Positions 12,901 through 28,290 of a DNA stretch of 64,000 nucleotides are shown here, one piece after another. The stretch spans positions 1-64,000 of the forward strand of contig CDMY01000497.1 in the NCBI GenBank assembly GCA_001179505.1, in the 5' to 3' direction. The DNA is from Vitrella brassicaformis CCMP3155. Taxonomy: Eukaryota; Protista; Chromerida. The position numbers and the translations under genes were made by a program. The notes under the pieces are model-generated. The model made no database searches. It saw only the letters and a list, made by a program, of their open reading frames with translations, and was not told where the DNA came from. Each line of letters opens with the position of its first letter. Positions within the stretch are counted from its first letter, which is position 1.

Positions 12901-13348
12901 CGCGCCTGCAGCCCCCTCCCATCAGCCAGCCCCACAGAGAGCGATCTCCAGCCCCTTCCCAAGGCCAAGCGCCGCCCGACACCTTATGAGAAGGATGAGG
13001 CGCAGCCGTCTTCTGTGCGTCGGGGAGAGGTGCTGTGGGACCCGTTGAACAAGGCGCGGGAGGGCGAGATCGTCAAGGCAGCAGAGACAGCGGACGACCA
13101 GACCGGCCTGACCATGGGGAAGAGGGCGCCTCGCGGCGAGGGGCGACCAGCGTGTGCTGGGCCGCCGTGCTTCGGATTGGCACTGCCGGGTGGACCTGGC
13201 GCGGTGCCCCCTAGCCGCAGAGGATGGTGGTGATGATGACAAGATGGATATCGATGAGGGTGCGGGTGCCGCTGGTGGCGATGGTACGCTGGAGAGCCTG
13301 GCGGAGTGGCTGGGCAAGGGGTTTGATTGGATGGGATGGTTCATGTGA
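9906..13348 (+). CDS. Ulp1/SENP-family SUMO (C48) protease with long basic/acidic N-terminal and low-complexity C-terminal regions; start and last exons uncertain
   Basis: Exons encode CLEDLAWLNDEIVD, VWIPNSFFWQFL, FELDYLLVPIN..GTHWALGVVDV, IRVLDSLGG and LPQQTNGYDCGVFVL. The His (HW), Asp (DS), oxyanion Gln and Cys (DCG) of the C48 family are all present. Confidence 0.9.
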
Positions 13349-13818
13349 GTCGTGGCTGCGTTGTCTGCATGATCGTTGAGAGAGAGACACACGCCAGTTC
13401 ATGAGTGGATGCATGGTGTCTATCTGATCTGTTGTTTGGCGGGAGATCGATGCATTCGTATGTCTGATATATTGTCCTCTCCTGTGTGTGACGGAGTTCG
13501 TTCCTTTTCCACTTCTGCCTGCTGTTGTGTCATACACACACACACGTGTGCATGAACCTGGCGCGAATGACCGTATTTCACTACCCCCAAGCAGCCCAAC
13601 CCCACCCACCCTATCACACACTCACATACACACACTCTCCCAAACCCCACACTCGTGCACTGCCAGTCGCCAGTCGGTGTGAAAGGGACACAGCCCAAAA
13701 GCACACACACGACTAAAACCGATCAGTCAGTCAGTCAGACAGACAGGCCCTCCCCACTAGCACACTAGGCAAAGAAAGCCAGCCGTAGAACACACGAGAC
13801 AGACAAAGGAAGGAGGAT

Positions 13819-16800
13819 CTACTTGCTGCCCTTGGTTTGCAGCCGACGGGCAGTGGCCTTGACCTCGTAGTGGTCAACCCAGCTGTGCGTTTGGAGGAAG
13901 AACCAAGAAAAACACAAAGACAGTATTATCTTGATTGATCCGTGTCTCTTGAGGACATCTGTGTGTGAGTGTGTATGTGTATTGGTTCGTACCGGCCTGT
14001 GGGCGTGACGAACTTGGTGGGGTCGTCGTCCTTGGTCGATCGGATCATCTTGCAGGAGGCGGAAAGCTGTTCAAAGTCGAAGGACTTGCAGATGGTCTCC
14101 TCCAGACACTTGCGGGCGCATGTGGCGGCATTCTGGACGGTGAAGACGGGGAAGTCGCCCGACACCAACAACTCCTTCTCCGAGTACCTGCATGCAGCCA
14201 ACACACACAGCAGAAAGGATGCGATTGATGTATCGGGAAGGGGCATGACAGCACACATGTATCTGTGTGGCGGTTCGCGTACCTGTCGAACTGCAGCAGG
14301 GGGTTTTCGCCATCTATGGAGGTCAGGTCGACGCCCTCGGCGGTGATCTCGGCTCCCTCAGTTTCCATGAGGGGGGAGAACTCGAGTGGCAGTCTCATGA
14401 AGGTGTCGTTGGTCTTGAGGTACAGGACGCCTTGGCCGCCAGACCACAAAGTGCGCGACAGGTCGCACGCGTCGGGGTCCGTGTAGCACACTGTCCGGAT
14501 AAGGAATGCAATGCAGCACACACAGACAGAAAGCGAGACAGAGAGGGAGAGGCTTGATGGATGGATGTTGGCCGTGTATATGTATGTGTGTGTGTTGGCG
14601 AGGTGCGTACCCTGGAGTCCGTCGGTTTCCTTGAGGAAGTGTGCGACGTTGATTCTGAGTTCGGTCTGTCCCTTGGGCGGGATGATTCCGTGTGGCGTGC
14701 CGGCCATGGTCATCCAGTGGTGTGCTGAGATGGGCATGTAGTGGATAGCGGTGCCCGTGGTGGGGTACGCCGACGTGGCCGAAACCTTCTTGTGTGTGGT
14801 GCCGCTCTTGAGCCCGATCTTGATGTGCTTGTCGCTCTGCGGGTTGAAGGCGTCGGCGTGCGTGATGCCATGGACGTTCTCGTACAAGAAGTGGATGGGG
14901 CCGCTCTCCTCGAGCACCACCTGGAAGTTGATGGTCCCCGCCCCGGCGTACTTGAAGCCGCTCCAGTGGACCGTCACGTCGTGCTCATCGACCGTGACGT
15001 ACACCCCATCCGCCGTCGACAACTCGGACGAGGCGTACCCGTTGATGACCTGACCAAACAAGTCAATGCGATGCGGCCACACACACAGAGGATGGATGGA
15101 CGCCAAGGGGATAGATGAGTGCGCGTCTACAGCTGACCCCGTCGTAGCCGAGTAGGATTGAGCCGTCGAGTGAAACCTTCATGGTCGAGTATATGCCACC
15201 GAAGTACGGGACAGGGAAGGGCAGAGCCACCTCCGTCTCCCTCTCGCCAGATTCAAACGTGACCTTGTTCTCAACCGTCTTGTTCTCGAACCAGAAGAAG
15301 TCACCTGAATGGACAAGACAGCAAGTACCCTTCCTGGATGATTTCCCTCGCTCACTCACTCACTCACTCACTGACTCATTCACTCAGCTTCTACCTACCG
15401 GTGGTCATGACGTAGTCGGGGGCGGTGGGGATCTGGGTGTCCATCCCCAGCTGCGCGCAGTACATGAGGCCCTTGACCGCATCCTCGTTAGTTATCTGAT
15501 GACCAATTAAAGGATCGACACGCACGCATTGAATAAAGCACACGCCACGCCAGCAAGGGAAACAACCGAGAAGTGGATGATCGCTGCTGCCAATTCTCGC
15601 GTCGCTGACTGACCTTGATTTTGTAGGTGTTGGCTGTGTTGGATGGGATGCGCTCCCGGATGCTTGGGGGGGAAACGCCGAAGGAGGCGCCCTCACATGT
15701 GAGTGTGAGTGTCTTGCTAGTGGTGATATCCCGGCCGGCGGGAGAGCCTTCATTGGTGGCCAGGTGCAGGGTGGCGGTGCGGGTGCCGCTCTTGGACGGG
15801 ATGCAACGGACCTGAGGAAACCAGAGAGGGAAAGAGAGACAGAGAGACAGACAGACAGACGTTCAGCGAGCCATGTGTGTAGGTAGGGCTGCTTGTCGGT
15901 GAGTGTGGGCTGGCTGACCTTGACAAGGTGGGATTCCTGGTTGGGCGAGACGGTGACTATCATGCCCTTGGGCGGCAGCACTTCAAAGTCGTTGGCGTGG
16001 TCTCCCGTCACGTCCTGCACTTGCACGGCCAGGACACCGGTGCCGCCGTTGGCTATGGGCACCTCAACGGCAGGACTGGGCACGTGGACAGCACTCTTGC
16101 CCACGGACAGACTCGCAGGCAAAGCCGGCGACAGGCTCGACCCGCCCAACGCCAGCAGCCGCAGGGAAGACTCCACACTGCTGCCGCCGCTGTGGATGTC
16201 CAAAGTGGCCCTGCGTAGATGCAAACAGACACACACCGTCGAACGGCACGGTACGGCCAGGTGGAAAAGAGTGCGTCTCCCAGGCATCCCTACCCGTATT
16301 GGCCGGCAGTGACGGCGTCGACCTCGACTGTCACATTGACTGTGGCGCCCGCTGCCACTGTGGCCGTCGCAGGGTACGACACGGCGTTGGTCAAGCTCGC
16401 CGTCATCTGCACTCATCACACGTCATGAACACCCACTTCCTCTGCACTACTCCGTTTGGACAGACAGACAGGCAGACCGTCATGTGTGGTGGGTGGCTGG
16501 GCTACCTGGAGGGCCTTGCTGACGTTGAGTCTCTTCTCGGTGACGGTCAGGAACGTGTCGTTTTCAGAGAGGGGCGTGCCGCTCTGCAGCAGGACCTCCT
16601 TCTGCTGGGCCCACGTCAGGTCCGGGTTGACCGCCAGCATGAGCGCCACAGCACCCGTCACGTGCGGCACGGCCATCGATGTGCCGTTGGCCGTGTACAG
16701 CCTACAAGGCCAGACAGACACACAGACAGACCGTCCATCCGCCCATCGACAGAGGGGTCCTCTTTGTCTGCGTCATGCACGTCGCCTACGATTCATTGAA

Positions 16801-19800
16801 GAGGCTGGCTGGCACAGTCGAGACGATGTTAGCACCGGGCGCCGCGAGGTGGATGGTCTCATTGCCGTAGGACGCCCAGTAGGGGATGTGGCCGTCTTCG
16901 TCATGCGCCGTGACCGTCACCATGTTGGGAATACCGAAGGTCGCCGGGAAGTCGGGCATGGCGTCGTTGTCGAATCCCTCATTGCCTGACATCGTATGCA
17001 TCCATCCATCAGGCTATGTACGAATGTATGTATGCATGGGTGCCCTGTCTTGTCTTGTCCTGTGGCCTGCCTGCGGCACAGATGAACAGCTGGTTGGCCT
17101 TCATGTTGGCGACAATGGCGTTGTAGAGTGCGGAGCTGAATCGGACTCCGCCCCACGAGTTGCTCGTCACGTGCGCCCCGTGGTCCACCGCATACTCGAG
17201 GGCCTCGATGGCATCCGACATTAGACCTGATCACATTCCAGACACACAACAAACACACACACACACACACAGACACAGATGGGCCACAAGGAGACATGTA
17301 GCCCATTCACAGAGAGTATCAGTGGGTCAGTAACGTACCACTGCCATCAGCTGCGAGGAATTTGAGTGCCATGATTTGGGCCTTCCACGCAACGCCGCTA
17401 ACTTCGGCTCCGTTGTTGCCCTTGGCGGCAATGACACCAGCAACTAAACAAATGCACACAGGCAGACAGACAGACAGACAGGCGTGGTGTCAGTCGATTG
17501 GTATATCGGCCGATCGGTAGGTCTGTCTGTCTGTCTGTGTGTGTGTGTGTCTGTCTGTGTGTGTGTGTGTCTGTCTGTGTGTGTCGGTATGGTAGCGAGT
17601 GCTGTGTCTGCAGTGCTGCATACCATGTGTTCCGTGCCCGGCGTCATCCATGGGGTCGCCATCCTTGTTGCGGAAGTCATAGCCGTAGATGTCGTCTATG
17701 TAGCCGTTCTCTGCCAACACAAACACACACACGCAACCATGTACCTACCTACCCGCCCATCCCATACATGCATACCGTCGTCATCAACGCCTGCTTGTCC
17801 GTTGAGTTCGGCCTGGTTGACCCAGAGGTTGTCCTTGAGGTCGTTATGCGTGTAATCGACGCCCGTATCGAGCACAGCCACCACAGGGCCCTTGGGCAGC
17901 TTGGTGGACGAGCCAGTGGTCACAGACCACGCATCGGGGGCGCCGATGGACAGCATGCCCCACTGGTTGCCGAAGGAAGGGTCATTGGGGACTGTGCCTG
18001 TGGCCTTGACCACCTGGTCCTCCTCGCACGCCGCCACACTCTCGTCGCTGCAGATCTCGTCCACATTCTTCTGGAACTCGGTGATGTTGGCAGGGTTCTG
18101 GGGGTCCACGTACAGCTCCAGGATGTCCACGTGGCTGCGACGCATCTTGCGGTGCTCCTTGATGGCTGAACACACCAACACACCACACCACAACACAGCA
18201 CAACATGAGATAGCGACGCAAGGATACCTCTGCCTGTCTGCCCTTTGTGCAGCCATCCATATCACAGATGCATACGTACAGTACCGTCTTTGAGTCTATC
18301 GACGATGTCTGAGAGCCAGCCGAGTCGTCTGCGTCCTGCCTCTGCAGCGGTAGCGTTGTGGTAGACGACGAGGATGCGGGGAGGCGAGCCCAGGGCTGTC
18401 GTGCTGCCGCTCGGGGGAGTGCCACTCAGCTTCCGCCCCGCAGCCTTGTCAGCCTCATCCGCAGACGTGCTGAATGAAGCAACAAGCCAGCGAAACACAC
18501 AAGACGGAGGTAGGTCAAAGCACTCACTTCACAATCTCTTGCTGACATGTGTTCCTTGGCCTTGGCCTGGAGTGCTCGTCTGGCGGTCTGTGTGGCGTTG
18601 GTGACGTTGTTGAGGTCGAGTGATTCCTGTATGTCGGCCTCGATGGCAGCGTGTGCACTCGACAGCTTGGCGAAGTCATCGGCCGTGAGGAACAGTGGCA
18701 GCGGCATGGGCAGCCAGGGGACCGTGCCAGTGGTGTCGCTCAGGTGGAACAGACCCAGGCTGTACAGCATCGATATGTCCGCACTGACAGACACCAACAC
18801 ACATACATACACAAAGAGACAGACAGACCCATTCACACGTGGCTGGCCGTGGTGTTGTGTTGGTTGGAAGCCTGCTGCTTACTTGAAGAGTTCTGTGTTG
18901 ATGACGTCTCTGTTTCTGGAGATCATCCAGAGGTCGAGGTCGGTGAATATGGGCGAGAAGGCGGCGGCGGTGGACTCCTGTGTGTTGGCTGGGGACGTCG
19001 TGAAGAAACCCATCTTGACCATCTCGCTGAAGAGCGCAGACCCTGCCGTTGCATTCAGCTCGCCAAACAATGACGCACTCGACTGCACACGCCGACAGAG
19101 GCAGGCGGAAACACAATGCATCGGGCTTGCTGGTGGCTGGCTGGCTGACCGTGTCGAATGTGACGGCGAGTATTTTGTTGTCGTCGTCCACTTTGACAGA
19201 GCGAACGAGGTATTCATTGGCCTGTGTCTCCGTGTAGTTCCAGTCGCCAGACCCACGGAAGAGTGTGCTGGCCGGGAAGTCCGCGTACGCCAGCCGACGG
19301 GAGCCTCCACCGCCCTGCTTGGCCTTGAGCTGACGAGCCTGCAAGACAGAGAGGGGGAGAGGGATCAATGGATCAATGGATGGATGGACGGATGCGTGGA
19401 TGGATGAGGGAAAAGGCCCGCCAGGCACACGACACGTGTGCTGCTCGCTATCGGTAGTGCTGGTCTGAAGGTTGGTGTTGTACAGTATCTACCTACCGCT
19501 GGGGGTGAGATGTTCTTCCAGTAGAAGTCGGGGTTGGCGGCGTTGACGGCAGTGGCGTCGAATGACGAGAGGAGCACCATGTTCCACTTGTGCAGCACGT
19601 GGTCCTTGGCCGTGCCCACCAACGACTCCCACGTCGTACCCGCCTTCATGCCCAGGTCACGAGGCGTCACCTCACTGAAAGACATACATACACAACACAC
19701 GACACGGCAAGACGCATGTACAGCCATGTTGCACACTGCCTGTGGTGGTGTAGTGTCCCTCTCTGTTTGGCCGCCTGGCTGGCTGGTTGACTGACTTTTT

Positions 19801-22800
19801 GCGCCAGGCGGATGTTTCCAAAAGGCTGAGGTCGAAATTGGAGAGGTGTGCCGATGCAGGGAACTCACCGATGGCGCAGTCGTGGAAGTTGGGGTGCCAG
19901 TTGGACGACCTGAGCGAGGTTTCAATCAATGAAGGAAGGCACCCATGTTGATGATTGCATGTGTGTGTGGTGCCCTACTTGAAGAATCCGATGGGTTCTG
20001 CGTGTCCCTCATAGACGGCCCAGAAGCGGGCGCCGCCATAGGTGGATGCGGTGGGTGTAGTGAGGTTCTGGTACTCGAAGCCCCATGGCTTGATGGCCCC
20101 GTCGCGGGAGCGGATGAAGCCCCACGGGTGCCACACGCCATCCTGGCTCTTGTAGACGCCCCATGGGTAGAAGGTGTTGTCGTAGCTGCCACACGAGACA
20201 CAACACACGCAAGTGCATAAGTATTCCATCGTCTATCTATCTGGATTGATGCCTCGGTTCGCTGCTCGCTGGCTCTTTCGTATGTGACATCCATCTGTGT
20301 GTTTACCTGAAGTATCCGATAGGGACGATTTTCCAGGAGACGTCCCTCCAGGTGCTGGCCGTCGGTGACATTTCCATCGTAGGGTCGGCTGGGCTATAGG
20401 ACCCAGCGTCGATGGGTGGTGGAGCTGCAGCAGCCTCCAGACGCCGCCCCGCTACTTCGGTCTCTTCCGGCGGCTGGTAGAACAGGCCGCACGAGACGCA
20501 CCGCTGGATGCCTATGGCGCCCCAGCGCTGGAAACCTGGGGAGCCCCAGCGCTGGATGCCACCGGACATCCATCGGGAGAAGCCAGGAGGCATCAGCATG
20601 CCGTCCTCGCTACCGGCGATCGACCGCTGAATGCCGGGTGACATCCACCGCTGAATGCCGGGTGACATCCACCGCTGAATGCCGGGGGCACCCCAGTCTC
20701 CCCAGGAGCGCTGGATGCCTCCAGAGCCCCAGTTACTCCACCGCTGCAGGCCGGGAGAGCCCCAAAAGCTGCGCTGGATGCCGGGAGAATTCCACCCCCA
20801 GGTGCGATGGATGCCGACCGGCATCCAGATGCGCTGAATACCGGGCGACCCCCAGCCCCACCGTTGAAAGCCCGGGGACATCCAGCCCCATCGCTGAATG
20901 CCGGGGGGCGCCCATCCCCACCGCTGAATACCGGGCGACATCCAGCCCCACCGGGCGATGCCCTGCAGACATACCACACAAACACACATATGTGACGGCG
21001 GGGCATCATGTCACGTATCTGTGCCTGGATTGACTTACGATAGGCATCCAGTTGTTCCAGCGACCGAGCCCCACGTGGTTCAGGACCCCGAAGTAGCTGT
21101 CGAGCCAGCGGGCGATGCCCGTCCAGCCCCAGCCGTAGGCAGCAGGATGCCATCTCGCGATGCCGAACCAGCCCCTGGTCCATTCATATGCCGCCAGACA
21201 GACAGACGGCAAGAAAATGCGCAAAGCAGAGACATACCTTCTCTTTCCCTTTCTTATCTGGATTGGCTCACCAGCCGTGGTAGGCAGGACTCACCCAGCG
21301 TCCCTTGGCCACCCATCCCTGACATACAAGCGACGTATCCGTGAGATCCACTCATTCACCCAAATAGCGCATTCATCCCTCTCGCTCTTCAGCACACTCA
21401 CCCATCCCCAGTAGTCGTTGAAGGACCAGCGGCCGTTGCCGACCCACCTGAATGCCAAGACCGTCAAGAAGGCGTCTGTACATCCATCTGTGCGGTGCGC
21501 CTTCGTTACCCGAATCCAGTGTATTCGTAGGGGTTGTATCCTCGCGCAATGCCAGTCCATCCCCTGAACGACAATCGAGACGCCCTCAACACTCGTTCGT
21601 ATTTGATGCAACATGTCAAGTTTACCAGCCAGGGTTCCAGCGGGAGATGTCTGAAGGAGAGCAGAGCACGGACACAGAAGAGCAGGTGCTGTGATTGCAT
21701 GGCCGGGCTAGCTGCCTTTCACCCGGCCCACCCACCTTCCATGGTCCGATTCTCCTCTGCTCTAGCAATGCCGGTCCAGCCCCAGTCGGGATTCCAGCGG
21801 GCAATGCCAACGTAGCCCCTGAAGGAATCCACGGCAAAAAGGGAAAGGTCTGCCTTATTGAATCTTCTGTGTGCTTATGCACCGTACCATGAGCGTTGGA
21901 TACCCACATTTCCACTAGGTGACACGGTTACAGGCATAAGCAAGTCATCGTAGCCGTGTGTGTCGTGTGTGTGCGTATGTCAGTACTAATAAGGGTTCCA
22001 ACGCTCGTGGCCTGAAATGGCGCCTCTGTGCAAATAAGGAAATCGAGAGATCCCACACGGTGGGTGTGAGGTATTGGTATGTGGTAGGTCGTCGCGGCTT
22101 ACCCTTCGTAGTACCACGGGGTCCAGCGGGCCATGCCAAACCACCCCCTAGACAGACAGAGAAGAAGGCAGAAGCCAGGACATGAACAAACAGGTGTTAC
22201 ACAATCACGGGCAGCTTCACATGTGTATTTGGTCCCTGTGCGCACCAGCTGAAGTATGCGGGATTGAACCAGCGGGCAGTGCCCACCCAGCCCTACAACA
22301 TCAATGAAGCACAGGCATTTATTCCATCTTGGCTATGTATCTGTTTCCTTTGGCCTCCCCTTGTGTGTAGTGCAGTGCAGTGTAGCATACCCATCCCCAG
22401 ATGTCGCTCCATCTCCAGTTCGCCCCGCCGACCCAGTTCCACCCGAGGAATGTGCCGAAGAAGCGAGACACGTCGGATATGACGAAGAAGGGCAGAGTCT
22501 TCATGCCGCTTTCGCCGAAGGGCCCGCCCTCGGACCACGACAGGGCCGGCGCAAAGGCGAGTTCGTCCCATGGGGATGCTTTCGAGTGGTCCACGAAGTC
22601 GGCCGAGCCGCCAGGCAGGAAGTACCGGGCTGAGAAGAGCCCCGGGCTCTCGCGAAACCCGAAGCTGTGGATCTGTCCACCACCGGGCAGCCACGCCTCT
22701 GCAGCACACACAGCAGGGCGGATGAACCGTCAGATTCACGCCCTTAATGCATTGTCTGGCACAGATCTCTAGATCTCACACAGATGTCGCCCTTCCCGCC

Positions 22801-23172
22801 CCCGACCTTTGTCTTCGGACCAGACGCCCTTGTCGCTTTCATTTGTGGCATACCACCAGCTCCAGTAGCTGTTGTAGTCGTCCGCGGTCCAGATGCTGTC
22901 TTTGGGCCAGAAGAGGGGCGCATTCCGCAGGTTCTTCACGGAAGCGACCACACCATATGGATGGATGCCTTGTTATGCGGTGCTATTCGATGCCTCACCT
23001 TGATGGAGATATCGAGGGTGGCCTCGCTGCCGCCATCGTTGGTCACTTTGATGGTGACGGGTGTTTTCTGCCCTGCTGTGATGTTCTGCTTGAGGAGCGT
23101 GTGGTCCACGGTGAGCTGGTGGCTACTGCCCACCAAGGAAAGGATTGCGAGCAAAAAGACCCCAAGCGACAT
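13819..23172 (-). CDS. Giant secreted S8 subtilisin-like protease (~2,000 aa, >30 exons). Architecture: signal peptide - Ig-like - Trp-rich GxxR repeat array - unknown region - prodomain - S8 catalytic domain - Ig/ASH-like domains - NIDO-like - PAN/apple
   Basis: I checked exon phases by hand from ATG 23172 to TAG 13819; a phase-compatible donor/acceptor pair exists at every junction, a few with weak sites. Catalytic triad is VAVLDTG, GHGTHVAG and [10 protein letters not shown]; oxyanion Asn is in AAGNEG. '[29 protein letters not shown]' is typical of bacterial-type subtilases. PAN: [33 protein letters not shown]-like: [22 protein letters not shown]-terminal [17 protein letters not shown] looks like a signal peptide. 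Confidence 0.85.
20511..22410 (-). repeat. Coding peptide-repeat array: ~29 units of G-[I/F/L/M/other]-[A/Q/other]-R followed by a Trp/Gly/Pro/Tyr-rich core
   Basis: 16 units lie in exon 20307-20962 ([24 protein letters not shown]...) and 13 more lie in ten upstream small exons (e.g. [37 protein letters not shown]). Confidence 0.9.
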
Positions 23173-23358
23173 CTTCGGGGCTTGTGAAAGGAGGGTGGAG
23201 GCAACGTTTTCGGCCGGAGGGGCTTGCGAGCTATGGGGGCAGGACGGCAAACGCGAAGGGAGAGATGAAATTCACAGAAAAAATCAAGGGATTGTAGGTA
23301 TACGTGTGATGGTGACGGGTGTTTTCTGCCCTGCAGTGATGTTGGTTGGTTCTCCGAC

Positions 23359-23457
23359 GAAATCGTTTGCGGTTCAAGGGAAGACGGCCTGCCTGAGATA
23401 GAATCGCCACACTCATTGCTTGTCCAGATCCAACCATCGGAGATGACGTCGACGTCG
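23359..23457. repeat. 99-bp dispersed repeat, copy 2, preceded by a 37-bp copy (23307-23343) of exon-1 sequence 23049-23085
   Basis: Direct alignments: 96/99 to 8911-9009 and 36/37 to 23049-23085. Confidence 0.9.
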
Positions 23458-23617
23458 TGGCCGTCCTTCTCTTCCCGCTGCCTCTTCTGTCGCATGATGG
23501 CCTCTGCTATCGCAACGTCCAGCTAGGGTTCGCTGCTGATGCCCATGACTTTTCGGGGTTCGTCAACATCTCGGTCTACAGCGGCAGTTGGGGCTTGTTC
23601 CGTCGACGGTGGTTCAG

Positions 23618-24100
23618 ATGAGCGACTTGGGCGAGCTGTTGTGTGCAGTGGTCCTGCAGAACGTCACCATGGTGCGCTCGCTGCTCAAGAAGTACCGCGC
23701 AGACCCCATCAAGATGCGCGGGACGACGGACGGAGTCACGGCTCTCCACTTGGCGGCATCGCGAGGCAGCCTCGATGTGGCAACGGCGCTGATTGATCGT
23801 CGTGCTGACGTCGACCGGCTGTCAGATCACCAACTATCGCCCTTGTCCGTGGCCGTCATGGTCAGCGACGGCGCTATGGCCGCACTGCTCTCGAGAGCTG
23901 GCGCTGACGCGGAGCTGCCGTGCCTGAATCCCGAGGAAGGCTTAGAGGATTCGAGTTAGGATGTCCTCTACATCAAGACACCGCTCCTCATTGCAGCAAA
24001 GTACGGCAAGCACAAGGCCATCGGGACGCTCTGGCTCCTCTCGGCAGCCCCGGTCAGCCTCCCCGGCCCTCGACGATATCGATGCCATTCGTCCAGCGGC
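23618..24100 (+). pseudogene. Ankyrin-repeat gene with in-frame stop, probably decayed
   Basis: GVTALHLAASRGSLDVATALIDRRADVD and LSPLSVAVM..ALLSRAGAD are followed by TAG (23957-23959). The same frame then resumes with another ankyrin repeat (KTPLLIAAKYGKHKAIGTL) before losing coding character. Confidence 0.6.
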
Positions 24101-26484: not shown

Positions 26485-28290
26485 TCAAAGCAGGTGCTGA
26501 TGAATGATGTTTGCTGACGGACTTGCCTCAAGAAGGAGGAGAGAGAAAGCCGAGAGCAGCAGCACATACGTTAGCGTGAAAACAGCTGCTGCCGAGAACA
26601 GCTGAGCTGGCCATGCCATCGCATTTGCCCCTCCCTCCCTCCCTCCCTCCCTCCATCCATCCATCCCTCCCTCCATCCATCCATCCCTCCATCCATCCCT
26701 CCATCCATCCCTCCCTCCCTCCATCCATCCCTCCATCCAGAGGACAGATCTCGAGAGATCTCCTTGTCTGTGTGTGTGTGATTGAATGGCTAAGGGTAGG
26801 GGCTTTGCTCATTTATGGCCATCGACATCCCATCATACATCTCACTCAAGGTGAGGATGACGCCGCGGTCAAGGTGAGCACAGACAAACGAGGCAGTGCA
26901 GGCAGGCAGGCAGGCAGGCAGAGAAGGAACAGAAGGGATCGAAGAGAATGGAGGGACCACGGCACACATCCACAACCGCGTGGATGTGTGTGGTGGTGTG
27001 TGTACCTGTGTGGATAGTGAGAGCTTTGTTGTCGTCGCCTCACCTCTTGATGACCGCCCTTCGGCCGATCAAACAGCCCACACAGCAGCAGCAGCCATGG
27101 ATGGCTGTCGACTCGCCGTCGTGGTGTCGCCGTGTGTCGACACGGACGGGTTGGGTTCTCTCAAAGGTGAGCCTGACAATAACACGGGCAGATGTGCAAG
27201 CACCTCGACCGACACTGTGGCGTGTAGGTGGGTGGATGGATGAATGGATGAATGGATGGATGGTCTGTCTGTCTGTCTGTCTGTCAGCACCGTGTCATCG
27301 TGTCCTTCTCGCCCATTTGGATTCTCTGTCTTTGTCTTGCTTTGACGTACTTCAGAAGTCCTCATGTGAGGAGCAAGGCGTGGCTGGTTGAGCGTCAGAG
27401 TGACCAAAGGCGGCGGGCATGAGTACACCAGCGTTGGCTGCGACGCTGACACACAGATAGCCATACGGGCAGTATACTCCCTGTATGTGTGCCAACATTT
27501 GTGCATATGTGTGTGTAAGTGTGGATCGTGATGGTTCCAATCGATTGGATTCAGTCAATACACTCAGCGTCTCAAGCACGGCACGTTCCATCCATCCATC
27601 CACACGACACACAAACACAGAAAGAGAGACGGAGAGAGTGAGACACTCACTGTGCACACCTTCCCGCCTCACCCCACCCGACCTCATACTGAAGAGCCAG
27701 CAGCATGGCGCGGTGCAGCGAGTAGAGGCAGACCCCCGCCCACACCGTGAGGGTGCGCTGCAGCAGCACGCACACATAAGACACGGAATCTTATGTCTGT
27801 CTTATGTGTGCGTGCGTGTGTGTGTAAGTGAGAAGGCAAATGGACTGTGTGGACAATACAAACGAGTGTTCTCCAGTTCGATGTATGAAGGGCATTGGTT
27901 TGTGAGAGAAGAACATGGCAGGAAGCTGTGATTCAAATTGTGTGTTCACAGACATGCAACTCAAACTTCTAAGTTTCTCCCCCTTTTTTCGGCGGCTTCT
28001 GAAATGTGTTCTTTGTTCGAATTCTCTAGAGTTTCTCCTGAATCCTTTATTCATTTTTCTGCGTTGCCGAAAATTGTTTTTTTACGATCACGAGTATCCC
28101 CCAACCAGCGATACTGGCCGGGCTAGTCGCGGTCTGTCTGATTCGGATGCGATGTGCCACCCCAGTAGTCCAATCATGGTTCCCCAGGCCAAGCACGTGC
28201 ACGCAGTCCGTGCAGCCCGTCGATCTCGCCCGTGTGTTGCAGCCACAGTGAGTGAACGCCTTAAAGCCATCGTGAGCCAGCATTCTATGC
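26485..28290 (-). CDS. Possible small multi-exon membrane protein (hydrophobic exon fragments)
   Basis: Hydrophobic stretches [23 protein letters not shown] and [27 protein letters not shown] lie between intron-like repeats; I could not build a full model. Confidence 0.2.

What the first reader, a model, noticed from the sequence alone, without database searches (positions are those of the whole stretch)
13819..23172. Candidate self-processing peptide factory: ~29 Trp-rich peptide repeats fused to an S8 protease in one secreted polyprotein
Seen: the ORF track suggests separate genes, but the exons splice in frame, e.g. GYFS|YDN (20307/20185), GFFK|SSNW and WRKN|EVTP. The result is one chain: signal peptide, Ig-like domain, repeat array, linker, then an intact subtilase (D/H/S/N) with Ig/NIDO/PAN tails. 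The array alternates a conserved G-I-[A/Q]-R motif with variable aromatic cores: [99 protein letters not shown]. Known: a conserved recognition motif plus variable cores is the layout of multicore RiPP precursors (cyanobactins, processed by the S8 proteases PatA/PatG; fungal dikaritins and KEX2 repeat proteins); enzyme-core fusion occurs in borosins and plant BURP peptides. Inference: the protease may excise a library of Trp-rich peptides from its own N-terminus. The alternative is a Trp/Arg/Gly-rich adhesive or cyst-wall module. I know of no described equivalent in alveolates but could not search.
Basis: partly seen in the sequence, partly recalled or inferred. Interest (0 to 1): 0.92.

Follow-up and report, generated by a model that had tools for sequence, protein, structure and literature searches.

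The report
Trp-rich repeat array fused to subtilase
A photosynthetic relative of malaria parasites makes one large secreted protein in which about 30 short tryptophan-rich repeats, each ending in arginine, sit ahead of an intact subtilisin-type protease; the fusion is real and has no known relatives, but nobody has yet shown that the protease cuts the repeats into peptides.

Summary
On the minus strand, 23172 to 13819 is one 2008-residue reading frame in 36 exons. Spliced RNA contigs show 27 of the 35 introns directly, including every junction from the repeat exon to the protease.

Residues 195-540 hold 30 Arg. Of these, 27 sit in G-x-x-R and 20 are followed by Trp. The consensus is W-[G/M]-x-x-G-I-[Q/A]-R-W, and Arg is spelled with five different codons, so the motif is kept by selection.

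The protease is an intact S8A subtilase with D1141, H1197, N1289 and S1361. Its nearest solved relatives are deseasin MCP-01 and Plasmodium SUB1. An Asp aligns with subtilisin position 166 at the floor of the S1 pocket, which would suit a basic P1 residue. A PAN domain follows, and a NIDO-like domain is a lead only.

The array has no relatives outside this species in 1.84 billion representative proteins. The only other copy is a decayed, protease-less partial duplicate on a Vitrella brassicaformis scaffold.

Cleavage into peptides is plausible but untested. The RiPP analogy is weak, because the conserved block fills most of each short unit.

The scan's first readers noted this same stretch a second time (s1-235821). 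They also noted a Trp/Gly/Arg repeat on another piece of the genome, probably the duplicate.

Interest is moderate to high.

The parts
13819..23172 (-). Whole coding region: 36 exons, 2008 aa, ATG at 23172, stop ending at 13819
   Evidence: 27 of the 35 introns appear as joints in RNA contigs.
23119..23172 (-). Signal peptide, about residues 1-18 (hydrophobic core [13 protein letters not shown])
   Evidence: Read directly from the sequence. No predictor was run. RNA coverage begins near 23225, and there is no upstream ATG.
22418..23118 (-). N-terminal beta-rich domain, residues 19-194 (exons 1-3); possibly an Ig/CARDB-like fold
   Evidence: Weak DUF11 hit, E 0.0044, on exon 1. Otherwise unassigned.
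20501..22417 (-). Trp/Gly/Arg repeat array, residues 195-540. About 14 longer units lie in the end of exon 3 and micro-exons 4-13; about 16 units of 8-12 residues (one of 17) lie in exon 14.
   Evidence: Consensus W-[GM]-x-x-G-I-[QA]-R-W. Arg spacing is 8-17 residues, apart from 5 and 7 at the two Arg of an acidic insert. No Pfam family. AF2 pLDDT 40.
20307..20962 (-). Exon 14, 656 nt: intron-free half of the array plus an acidic/Pro-rich tail with two Cys
   Evidence: Tandem Repeats Finder reports 24-nt and 30-nt periods here.
18382..20500 (-). Orphan middle region, residues 541-1009, including three 12-residue PWG repeats in exon 15
   Evidence: No Pfam hit. The only relative is the MMETSP transcript P0001. 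The AF2 model is poor.
18002..18381 (-). I9-like propeptide, residues about 1010-1096, ending ...EEDQVVKA just before the catalytic domain
   Evidence: Inferred from its position and its C-terminal motif. There is a weak match to the subtilisin E precursor (E 0.084). Pfam did not detect Inhibitor_I9.
16506..17992 (-). S8A subtilase catalytic domain, exons 22-27. Asp1141 at 17867-17869, His1197 at 17634-17636, Asn1289 at 16981-16983, Ser1361 at 16677-16679. Asp1299 (16951-16953) aligns with BPN' position 166.
   Evidence: Pfam PF00082 on four pieces. PDB matches. Coordinates.
15399..16406 (-). Beta-sandwich (Ig-like) region after the protease, exons 28-31
   Evidence: Sequence character only. 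Weak DUF4232 hit. The atlas neighbours of exon 33 (the NIDO-like exon) include HYDIN/ASH-type Ig clusters.
14611..15304 (-). NIDO-like domain, exons 32-33
   Evidence: Atlas feature search on exon 33: scores 0.90-0.91 to clusters carrying PF06119 NIDO. Pfam found nothing on the split pieces.
13995..14186 (-). PAN/apple domain, exon 35
   Evidence: PF00024 PAN_1, E 1.3e-8, 34.9 bits against a cut-off of 21.4.

Best explanation
This is a secreted subtilase zymogen with a giant N-terminal pro-region of about 1,075 residues. That pro-region carries a lineage-specific, probably disordered Trp/Gly/Arg tandem array.

Proposed course of events:
1. The signal peptide takes the protein into the secretory route.
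2. The S8A domain folds against its I9-like propeptide and cuts itself near residue 1096. This separates the mature protease, with its Ig-like, NIDO-like and PAN adhesive tail, from the array-bearing pro-fragment.
3. The pro-fragment stays docked through the propeptide and is then degraded, as subtilase propeptides normally are.
4. The array offers about 30 regularly spaced, exposed G-I-[Q/A]-R-W sites. It is cut into Trp-rich pieces, mostly 8-17 residues long, by the same protease, whose S1 pocket has acidic residues at the equivalents of BPN' 156 and 166.
5. The pieces most likely serve as extracellular wall or matrix material, or as secreted peptides.

Shown: one transcript and one reading frame, an intact catalytic set, motif regularity and selection on it, and the orphan status of the array.

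Inferred: the I9 assignment and the first cut, the cleavage at the repeat motif and its exact register (after R, or after the following W), and the function of the products.
For: - One ORF, with RNA joints bridging every exon from the array to the catalytic Asp.
- D/H/N/S are present and PF00082 is above cut-off on four exon pieces.
- 27 of 30 array Arg are in G-x-x-R and 20 are followed by W. W is also conserved at position -7.
- Arg is spelled with five codons and Ile with two. Motif blocks average only 57% nucleotide identity, so the motif is held at the protein level.
- There is only one Lys in the array, and almost no Arg outside the motif.
- The best solved match on three separate exon pieces is deseasin MCP-01. 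It has a non-strict preference for Pro or basic residues at P1 (PMC11294657).
- The residue aligned with BPN' 166 is Asp. G166E shifts subtilisin towards P1 Lys/Arg (PMC9126251).
- The array model has pLDDT 40, compatible with disorder.
- The only other copy of the array lacks the protease and is decaying.
- Alveolate precedent: aromatic-rich oocyst-wall precursors in Eimeria are degraded by subtilisin-like proteases before cross-linking (PMC3770453).
Against: - There are no protein-level data of any kind. Cleavage is not shown.
- With P1 = Arg, P4 is Gly and the conserved Ile sits at P3, which normally points to solvent. That is not the pattern expected if a subtilisin cleft had shaped the motif.
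- The likely autoprocessing site (…VVKA/T) has no basic P1.
- Pfam did not confirm the I9 propeptide.
- The position-166 alignment is in a loop and was not checked on a structure.
- Low pLDDT from a single sequence does not prove disorder.
- The predicted peptides carry a net charge of only about +1, so they do not resemble classical Trp/Arg antimicrobial peptides.
- There are no orthologs, so conservation across species cannot be tested.
Confidence: 0.42

Rival explanations
1. The array is not cut into peptides. It works intact as an extracellular structural or adhesive module. It would be an Arg/Trp cation-pi 'sticker' with Gly/Ser/Pro spacers that self-associates or binds wall polymers, either on the released pro-fragment or on unprocessed protein.
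For: - Composition is G 18.6%, W 14.4%, R 8.3%, plus S and P.
- The conserved block covers nearly the whole unit, as in degenerate structural repeats.
- The P4/P3 pattern fits a subtilisin cleft poorly.
- The C-terminal PAN and NIDO-like domains indicate a matrix or wall setting.
- Aromatic-rich repeat domains occur in other protist wall proteins, for example the diatom cingulins CinW and CinY (PMC9650480).
Against: - An exposed, Arg-punctuated, probably disordered stretch next to an active broad-specificity protease would be hard to keep intact.
- It lies in the pro-region, which subtilases normally destroy.
- The unit length varies from 8 to 17 residues, which argues against a regular folded solenoid.
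Confidence: 0.33
2. The giant pro-region, array included, mainly regulates the enzyme. It could act as a multi-site pseudo-substrate or decoy that delays activation, or as a sorting signal to a secretory organelle. Its fragments would have no function of their own.
For: - The array lies upstream of the I9-like segment.
- Apicomplexan SUB1 and SUB2 also have long N-terminal pro-regions. In the PDB chain of Plasmodium vivax SUB1 (4tr2), the catalytic domain starts near residue 294.
Against: - Thirty copies of a motif kept by selection, with synonymous divergence, is a great deal of sequence for a timing device.
- No comparable array is known in other subtilase pro-regions.
Confidence: 0.12
3. 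It is a true RiPP system. The cores are excised and then post-translationally modified or macrocyclised, as in cyanobactins, dikaritins or BURP peptides.
For: It is a repeat array with a constant flanking motif, fused to an S8 protease. This is only a formal resemblance to PatA/PatG processing of multicore precursors.
Against: - No macrocyclase insert or modifying domain was detected (Pfam).
- In half of the units the 'cores' are essentially the conserved motif itself.
- The protein has 2008 residues with adhesive domains.
- The S8 domain groups with the deseasin/SUB1 type of S8A.
Confidence: 0.03
4. The fusion is an artefact. There are two separate genes (array protein and protease), or the apparent continuity comes from paralog transcripts.
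For: - No single long read spans the whole gene.
- A transcribed paralog exists and contributes some contigs.
Against: - Contigs with 0-1 mismatches bridge 20185/20307, and also 18165/18285. The paralog has a 95-nt deletion in exon 15 and ends before exon 22, so it cannot be their source.
- The frame is open throughout.
- No joint or transcript end was seen between 20300 and 19900.
Confidence: 0.03

Closest known systems
Eimeria oocyst-wall precursors GAM56/GAM82 and their subtilisin-like processing (PMC3770453)
   Same: Both are alveolate. Both involve secreted aromatic-rich precursors that are thought to be cut into small peptides by subtilisin-like proteases to make wall material.
   Different: The Eimeria proteins are Tyr-rich, not Trp/Arg repeats. 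They are separate genes from the protease, so processing is in trans. No sequence relationship was found, and there is no regular G-I-Q-R motif.
Fungal KEX2-processed repeat proteins (KEPs; alpha-factor, Ustilago Rep1) (PMC6339444, PMC7329392)
   Same: Both are secreted proteins built of many near-identical short peptides. The peptides are separated by a basic cleavage site used by a subtilase-family protease.
   Different: KEPs use dibasic KR/RR sites and the Golgi S8B kexin in trans. Here there is a single Arg, no Lys, an S8A enzyme, and precursor and protease share one chain.
Deseasin MCP-01 (PDB 3vv3) and Plasmodium SUB1 (4lvn, 4tr2, 8cp0)
   Same: These are the nearest solved relatives of the catalytic domain. 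All are S8A enzymes with the NGY[IV]DD calcium-loop type, and MCP-01 accepts basic P1 residues. All are multidomain secreted zymogens with a pro-region.
   Different: Neither has a Trp-rich repeat array in its pro-region. MCP-01 carries PPC and PKD tails rather than NIDO-like and PAN. MCP-01 has His where this protein has Asp1299.
Cyanobactin-type multicore RiPP precursors with PatA/PatG S8 proteases
   Same: Repeated units have constant flanks and are cut by subtilases.
   Different: Those precursors are small peptides with hypervariable cores. The proteases are separate proteins with a macrocyclase feature. The systems are bacterial gene clusters with modifying enzymes, none of which is seen here.
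Diatom silaffin and cingulin wall proteins (PMC4557024, PMC9650480)
   Same: These are protist extracellular proteins built of short repeats. Silaffin precursors are cut at repeated basic motifs, and cingulins contain Trp- or Tyr-rich domains.
   Different: They come from a different lineage and have a different composition (Lys/Ser-rich, and linked to silica). They are not fused to a protease.

Membership tests
Peptidase S8A (subtilisin-type subtilases) | Match to the Peptidase_S8 profile above the curated cut-off | tested here: met
   PF00082 scored 23.5-37.7 bits (cut-off 21.8) on four separate exon pieces covering profile positions 2-26, 61-90, 97-151 and 236-276.
Peptidase S8A (subtilisin-type subtilases) | Catalytic triad in the order Asp-His-Ser, plus the oxyanion Asn | tested here: met
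   D1141 in VLDTG, H1197 in HGTH, N1289 in AAGNEG and S1361 in GTSMAVPH, all in one frame. The alignments to solved subtilisins agree.
Peptidase S8A (subtilisin-type subtilases) | N-terminal I9-type propeptide directly before the catalytic domain | tested here: inconclusive
   An EEDQVVKA motif lies at the expected place, and there is a weak match to the subtilisin E precursor (E 0.084). Pfam found no Inhibitor_I9 on the split pieces.
Kexin/furin proprotein convertases (S8B) | Kexin-type catalytic domain followed by a P domain, with dibasic substrates | tested here: not met
   Kexin chains match only weakly (E 0.011), far behind the S8A chains. No P-domain hit was found downstream. The array has single Arg residues and one Lys.
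Multicore RiPP precursors (cyanobactin/dikaritin type) | Conserved recognition sequences flanking hypervariable cores | tested here: inconclusive
   The conserved block is 9 residues. In the 8-10-residue units no variable core is left. The longer units have 3-8 variable residues that share a consensus of their own.
Multicore RiPP precursors (cyanobactin/dikaritin type) | Associated modifying or macrocyclising enzyme or domain | tested here: not met
   Pfam scans of the exon pieces and of the paralog products found no such domain. The upstream neighbour is an ankyrin-repeat gene. The rest of the genome was not searched.
KEX2-processed repeat proteins | Secreted protein with repeats separated by KR/RR dibasic sites | tested here: not met
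   A signal peptide and repeats are present, but each unit ends in a single Arg preceded by Q or A. There are no dibasic sites in the array.
   One open frame of 2008 aa. RNA joints link exon 14 through to exon 23 without a gap.
   This needs peptidomics or an in vitro assay. Only indirect support exists: an acidic residue at the position-166 equivalent, and the P1 preference of MCP-01 (PMC11294657).

The most novel reading that the evidence does not exclude
This would be the first subtilase that carries its own multi-copy peptide precursor inside its pro-region. Zymogen activation would release the array, and the same active site would then cut it at about 30 G-I-[Q/A]-R-W sites. The products would be a family of Trp-rich peptides, mostly 8-17 residues long, acting as functional end-products: wall building blocks, adhesives or signals. 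Enzyme and substrate would be encoded in cis in a free-living relative of Apicomplexa.
Probability: 0.27. Interest if true: 0.85.

Novelty: new variant of a known kind. Interest (0 to 1): 0.6.

Why it matters
Subtilases that cut repeat precursors are known: fungal kexin with KEPs, PatA/PatG with cyanobactins, and probably the Eimeria wall-forming proteases. In all of these, enzyme and substrate are separate gene products. A precursor array built into the enzyme's own pro-region would be a new and compact way to couple protease activation to peptide release.

It would also give a tractable model in a culturable chromerid for how alveolates turn aromatic-rich precursors into wall or matrix material. 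That process matters for the environmental resistance of coccidian oocysts.

If the array is instead an uncleaved Arg/Trp 'sticker' module, it is still an orphan extracellular repeat of unusual composition under clear selection.

Tried and rejected
- **Structure prediction.** The array exon alone gave pLDDT 40. The middle region, taken from the paralog transcript P0001:146-536, gave pLDDT 33. Both were too poor for fold searches, so none were run.
- **Full-length protein.** Whole-protein Pfam, homology and structure runs were therefore not possible, and all scans used exon pieces.
- **Homolog searches for the array.**
  - The 1.84-billion-protein representative search returned only same-species fragments (P0001, P0003, P0004) and unrelated low-complexity repeats such as GFDxxG arrays.
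  - The ESM Atlas gave no hit above 0.78.
  - The JGI metagenome contigs gave none.
  - The word-indexed search with P0001 found only itself.
- **Combinatorial splicing of micro-exons (note s1-205675).** The only variant contigs match the paralog L001 exactly. Only exons 5, 6, 7 and 10 are symmetric. There is no evidence for exon shuffling.
- **Paralog as an independent array-only gene.** Rejected. L001 carries large deletions, a frameshift, lost acceptor sites, an in-frame stop and an inverted array piece.
- **I9 propeptide.** Pfam at E up to 10 did not detect it.
- **Known repeat families.** No choline-binding, GW or other repeat family was detected by Pfam.
- **Classical Trp/Arg antimicrobial peptides.** Judged unlikely from the net charge of about +1 per unit.
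Full report
**Organism and setting.** The window is intron-rich eukaryotic DNA of about 58% G+C. The only relatives of the finding's N-terminal half lie on scaffold CDMY01000758.1 of assembly GCA_001179505.1. The CDMY accession series belongs to Vitrella brassicaformis CCMP3155 (PMC4501334). The scan's own notes place a Trp/Gly/Arg micro-exon repeat on 'another piece' of the same genome. The window is therefore most likely from V. brassicaformis, a free-living photosynthetic relative of Apicomplexa.

**Gene model.**
- I laid Logan contigs from four runs that behave as RNA (spliced) on 13300-23400. They gave 27 CT..AC joints, which are minus-strand GT-AG introns.
- The other eight introns were inferred from splice consensus and frame. 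One is GC-AG (17070-16986), seen as a non-canonical joint with a 6-nt ambiguity.
- Joining the 36 exons from ATG 23172 gives an uninterrupted 2008-codon frame ending at 13819.
- The junctions that would refute the fusion if absent are all present:
  - exon 14 (array) to exon 15 on one 443-nt contig with one mismatch (X12 record 10);
  - then 19907/19977, 19674/19796, 19337/19496, 19082/19150, 18783/18883, 18469/18547 and 18165/18285;
  - X12 record 8 has 0 mismatches and links the last pro-region exon to the first protease exon;
  - then 17710/17776.
- No long read covers the whole gene, so single-molecule continuity is still an inference from overlapping pieces.

**Architecture.**

| Residues | Feature |
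|---|---|
| ~1-18 | Signal peptide |
| 19-194 | Beta-rich N-terminal domain (weak DUF11 hit) |
| 195-540 | Trp/Gly/Arg array |
| 541-1009 | Orphan region; no Pfam family and an unusable single-sequence model |
| ~1010-1096 | I9-like segment ending EEDQVVKA |
| ~1099-1417 | S8A catalytic domain: D1141, H1197, N1289, S1361 |
| after 1417 | Ig-like beta-sandwich stretches |
| exons 32-33 | NIDO-like domain (atlas scores 0.90-0.91 to NIDO-bearing clusters; a lead only) |
| exon 35 | PAN_1 domain (E 1.3e-8) |

There is no C-terminal hydrophobic anchor.

**The array.**
- There are 30 Arg in 346 residues. 27 are in G-x-x-R and 20 are followed by Trp. There is one Lys.
- Composition is W 14.4% and G 18.6%.
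- There are two sub-families.
  - Units of 12-17 residues lie in the end of exon 3 and in ten micro-exons of 25-136 nt. Most follow the form R-W-x-P-x-x-Y-x-W-G-W-x-G-I-A-R.
  - Units of 8-12 residues (W-G-W-x-S-P-G-I-Q-R and shorter) lie in the single 656-nt exon 14.
- In the short units the conserved block is essentially the whole unit.
- Arg is encoded by CGC, CGG, CGA, AGA and CGT, and Ile by ATC and ATT in equal numbers. The 27-nt motif blocks average 57% identity. The repeats are therefore old, and the motif is kept by selection on the protein. A few very recent duplications also exist (24-nt period at 97% identity).
- The motif is specific to this place: 21 of 27 six-frame hits in the window fall at 20300-22400.

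**Relatives.**
- A full HMMER pass over 1.84 billion representatives with exon 14 found four proteins below 1e-10. Three of them (P0001, P0003, P0004) are same-species fragments. The fourth (P0002) and every other hit are unrelated low-complexity repeats.
- P0001 is an MMETSP transcript. P0003 and P0004 are gene calls on L001.
- L001 is a partial duplicate covering window 23132 to 18230 at 75-87% nucleotide identity. It breaks off inside the intron before the first protease exon.
- L001 has lost most of exon 3, all of exon 4 and half of exon 5. It also has a 1-nt deletion in exon 12, a 95-nt deletion in exon 15, two altered acceptor sites, an in-frame stop and an inverted array segment. The locus has no subtilase motifs.
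- L001 is still transcribed and spliced at the same micro-exon borders. This explains the 'variant' contigs, including the 35 letters between 21819 and 21996, which match L001 exons 6 and 7 exactly.
- The only intact copy of the array is therefore the one fused to the protease.
- JGI metagenome contigs held no relative. K-mers of the gene do occur in several marine sediment metagenomes.

**The protease.**
- Three exon pieces each have deseasin MCP-01 (3vv3) as their best solved match. E-values are 4.3e-10, 2.4e-5 and 2.9e-11.
- Tk-subtilisin and the Plasmodium SUB1 structures come next on the first catalytic exon. Thermitase, subtilisin BPN' and Carlsberg come next on the other two. Kexin is far behind. 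This is an S8A enzyme, not a proprotein convertase.
- In the HMMER alignment to a BPN' variant carrying Asp at position 166, the query's Asp1299 (in MPDFP) aligns with that position. MCP-01 has His there and thermitase has Asn. Glu1290 matches BPN' Glu156.
- From the literature: G166E moves subtilisin specificity towards P1 Lys/Arg (PMC9126251), and MCP-01 has a non-strict preference for Pro or basic P1 (PMC11294657).
- An Arg at P1 is therefore plausible. The alignment is in a loop, however, and could not be checked on a model, because the spliced domain has no usable reference.

**How it probably works.**
- In subtilases the propeptide is cut off by the enzyme itself and later degraded. This is established knowledge for the I9 family.
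- If the I9-like assignment is right, the first event after folding detaches everything upstream of about residue 1096, array included, from the mature enzyme. The mature enzyme keeps the PAN and NIDO-like adhesive tail.
- The pro-fragment is then held at the active site by the propeptide. Its array, probably unfolded (pLDDT 40), offers about 30 regularly spaced sites.
- I consider fragmentation at these sites the single most likely outcome (about 0.4). I rate the stronger claim, that the resulting peptides are the functional end-product, at about 0.27.
- The register is open.
  - Cleavage after Arg fits the acidic S1 floor, but it puts Gly at P4.
  - Cleavage after the following Trp would give the classical subtilisin pattern of P4 = Ile and P1 = aromatic.
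- The likely autoprocessing site has no basic P1.
- The main rival (0.33) is that the array stays intact as an Arg/Trp cation-pi adhesive or wall module. A regulatory or sorting role for the pro-region (0.12) is also possible.
- A true RiPP pathway is unlikely (0.03), for three reasons:
  - no modifying domain was found;
  - the cores are largely the motif itself;
  - the protein is a large adhesive multidomain enzyme.

**Comparison with known systems.**
- Functionally, the closest precedents are the Eimeria GAM56/GAM82 wall precursors, which are degraded by subtilisin-like proteases (PMC3770453), and the fungal KEX2-processed repeat proteins (PMC6339444, PMC7329392).
- This protein differs from both in four ways: Trp/Arg composition, single-Arg sites, an S8A enzyme, and above all the cis fusion.
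- The protein is a member of the S8A family (criteria met). It is not a kexin, a KEP or a cyanobactin-type precursor (defining features tested and not met).

**Verdict.** This is a new variant of known kinds: a subtilase zymogen plus a repeat precursor. Its defining claim, self-processing, needs protein chemistry. Interest 0.6.

Noticed in passing
L001:9856-13716 (GCA_001179505.1 CDMY01000758.1), matching window 23132-18230: A partial duplicate of exons 1-21 at 75-87% nucleotide identity. It has large deletions, a frameshift, lost acceptor sites, an in-frame stop, an inverted array piece (L001 11699-11933) and no protease. It is still transcribed and spliced (MMETSP transcript P0001; variant contigs in runs X10 and X13).
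   Followed up: yes
window 16986-17070 (minus strand): A GC-AG intron inside the subtilase domain, between ...ICAAG and NEGFDND. All four RNA-type runs show it as a joint.
   Followed up: partly
window 21039-22292: Ten consecutive micro-exons of 25-136 nt, most encoding one or two repeat units, split mostly within or next to the WGW element. Only four (45, 39, 27 and 54 nt) are multiples of three. No alternative splicing was seen.
   Followed up: partly
window 19979-20185 (exon 15): Three tandem units of about 12 residues, each containing P-W-G (FYPWGVY..., VWHPWGFI..., AIKPWGFE...). This is a second, different Trp-containing mini-repeat just after the array, and no family could be assigned.
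   Followed up: no
window 23588-23956 (+): An ankyrin-repeat ORF (Ank_4 E 5e-11) about 400 bp upstream of the subtilase ATG, on the opposite strand. The two genes are divergent neighbours.
   Followed up: partly
window 27787-28017 and L001:20384-20606: A stretch of about 230 nt shared at 81% identity between the window and the paralog scaffold, outside the duplicated gene. It is probably a dispersed repeat.
   Followed up: no
window 17521-17584, 17242-17277, 15347-15386: Introns are full of short GTCT/AC/CTCA microsatellites. When translated these create the misleading 'THTHT/CVCV' ORFs in the ORF list.
   Followed up: no
window 16400-23300: Several marine sediment metagenomes from 2023-2025 hold 6-42% of the gene's 31-mers. 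The organism, or a very close strain, therefore occurs in sediments.
   Followed up: no
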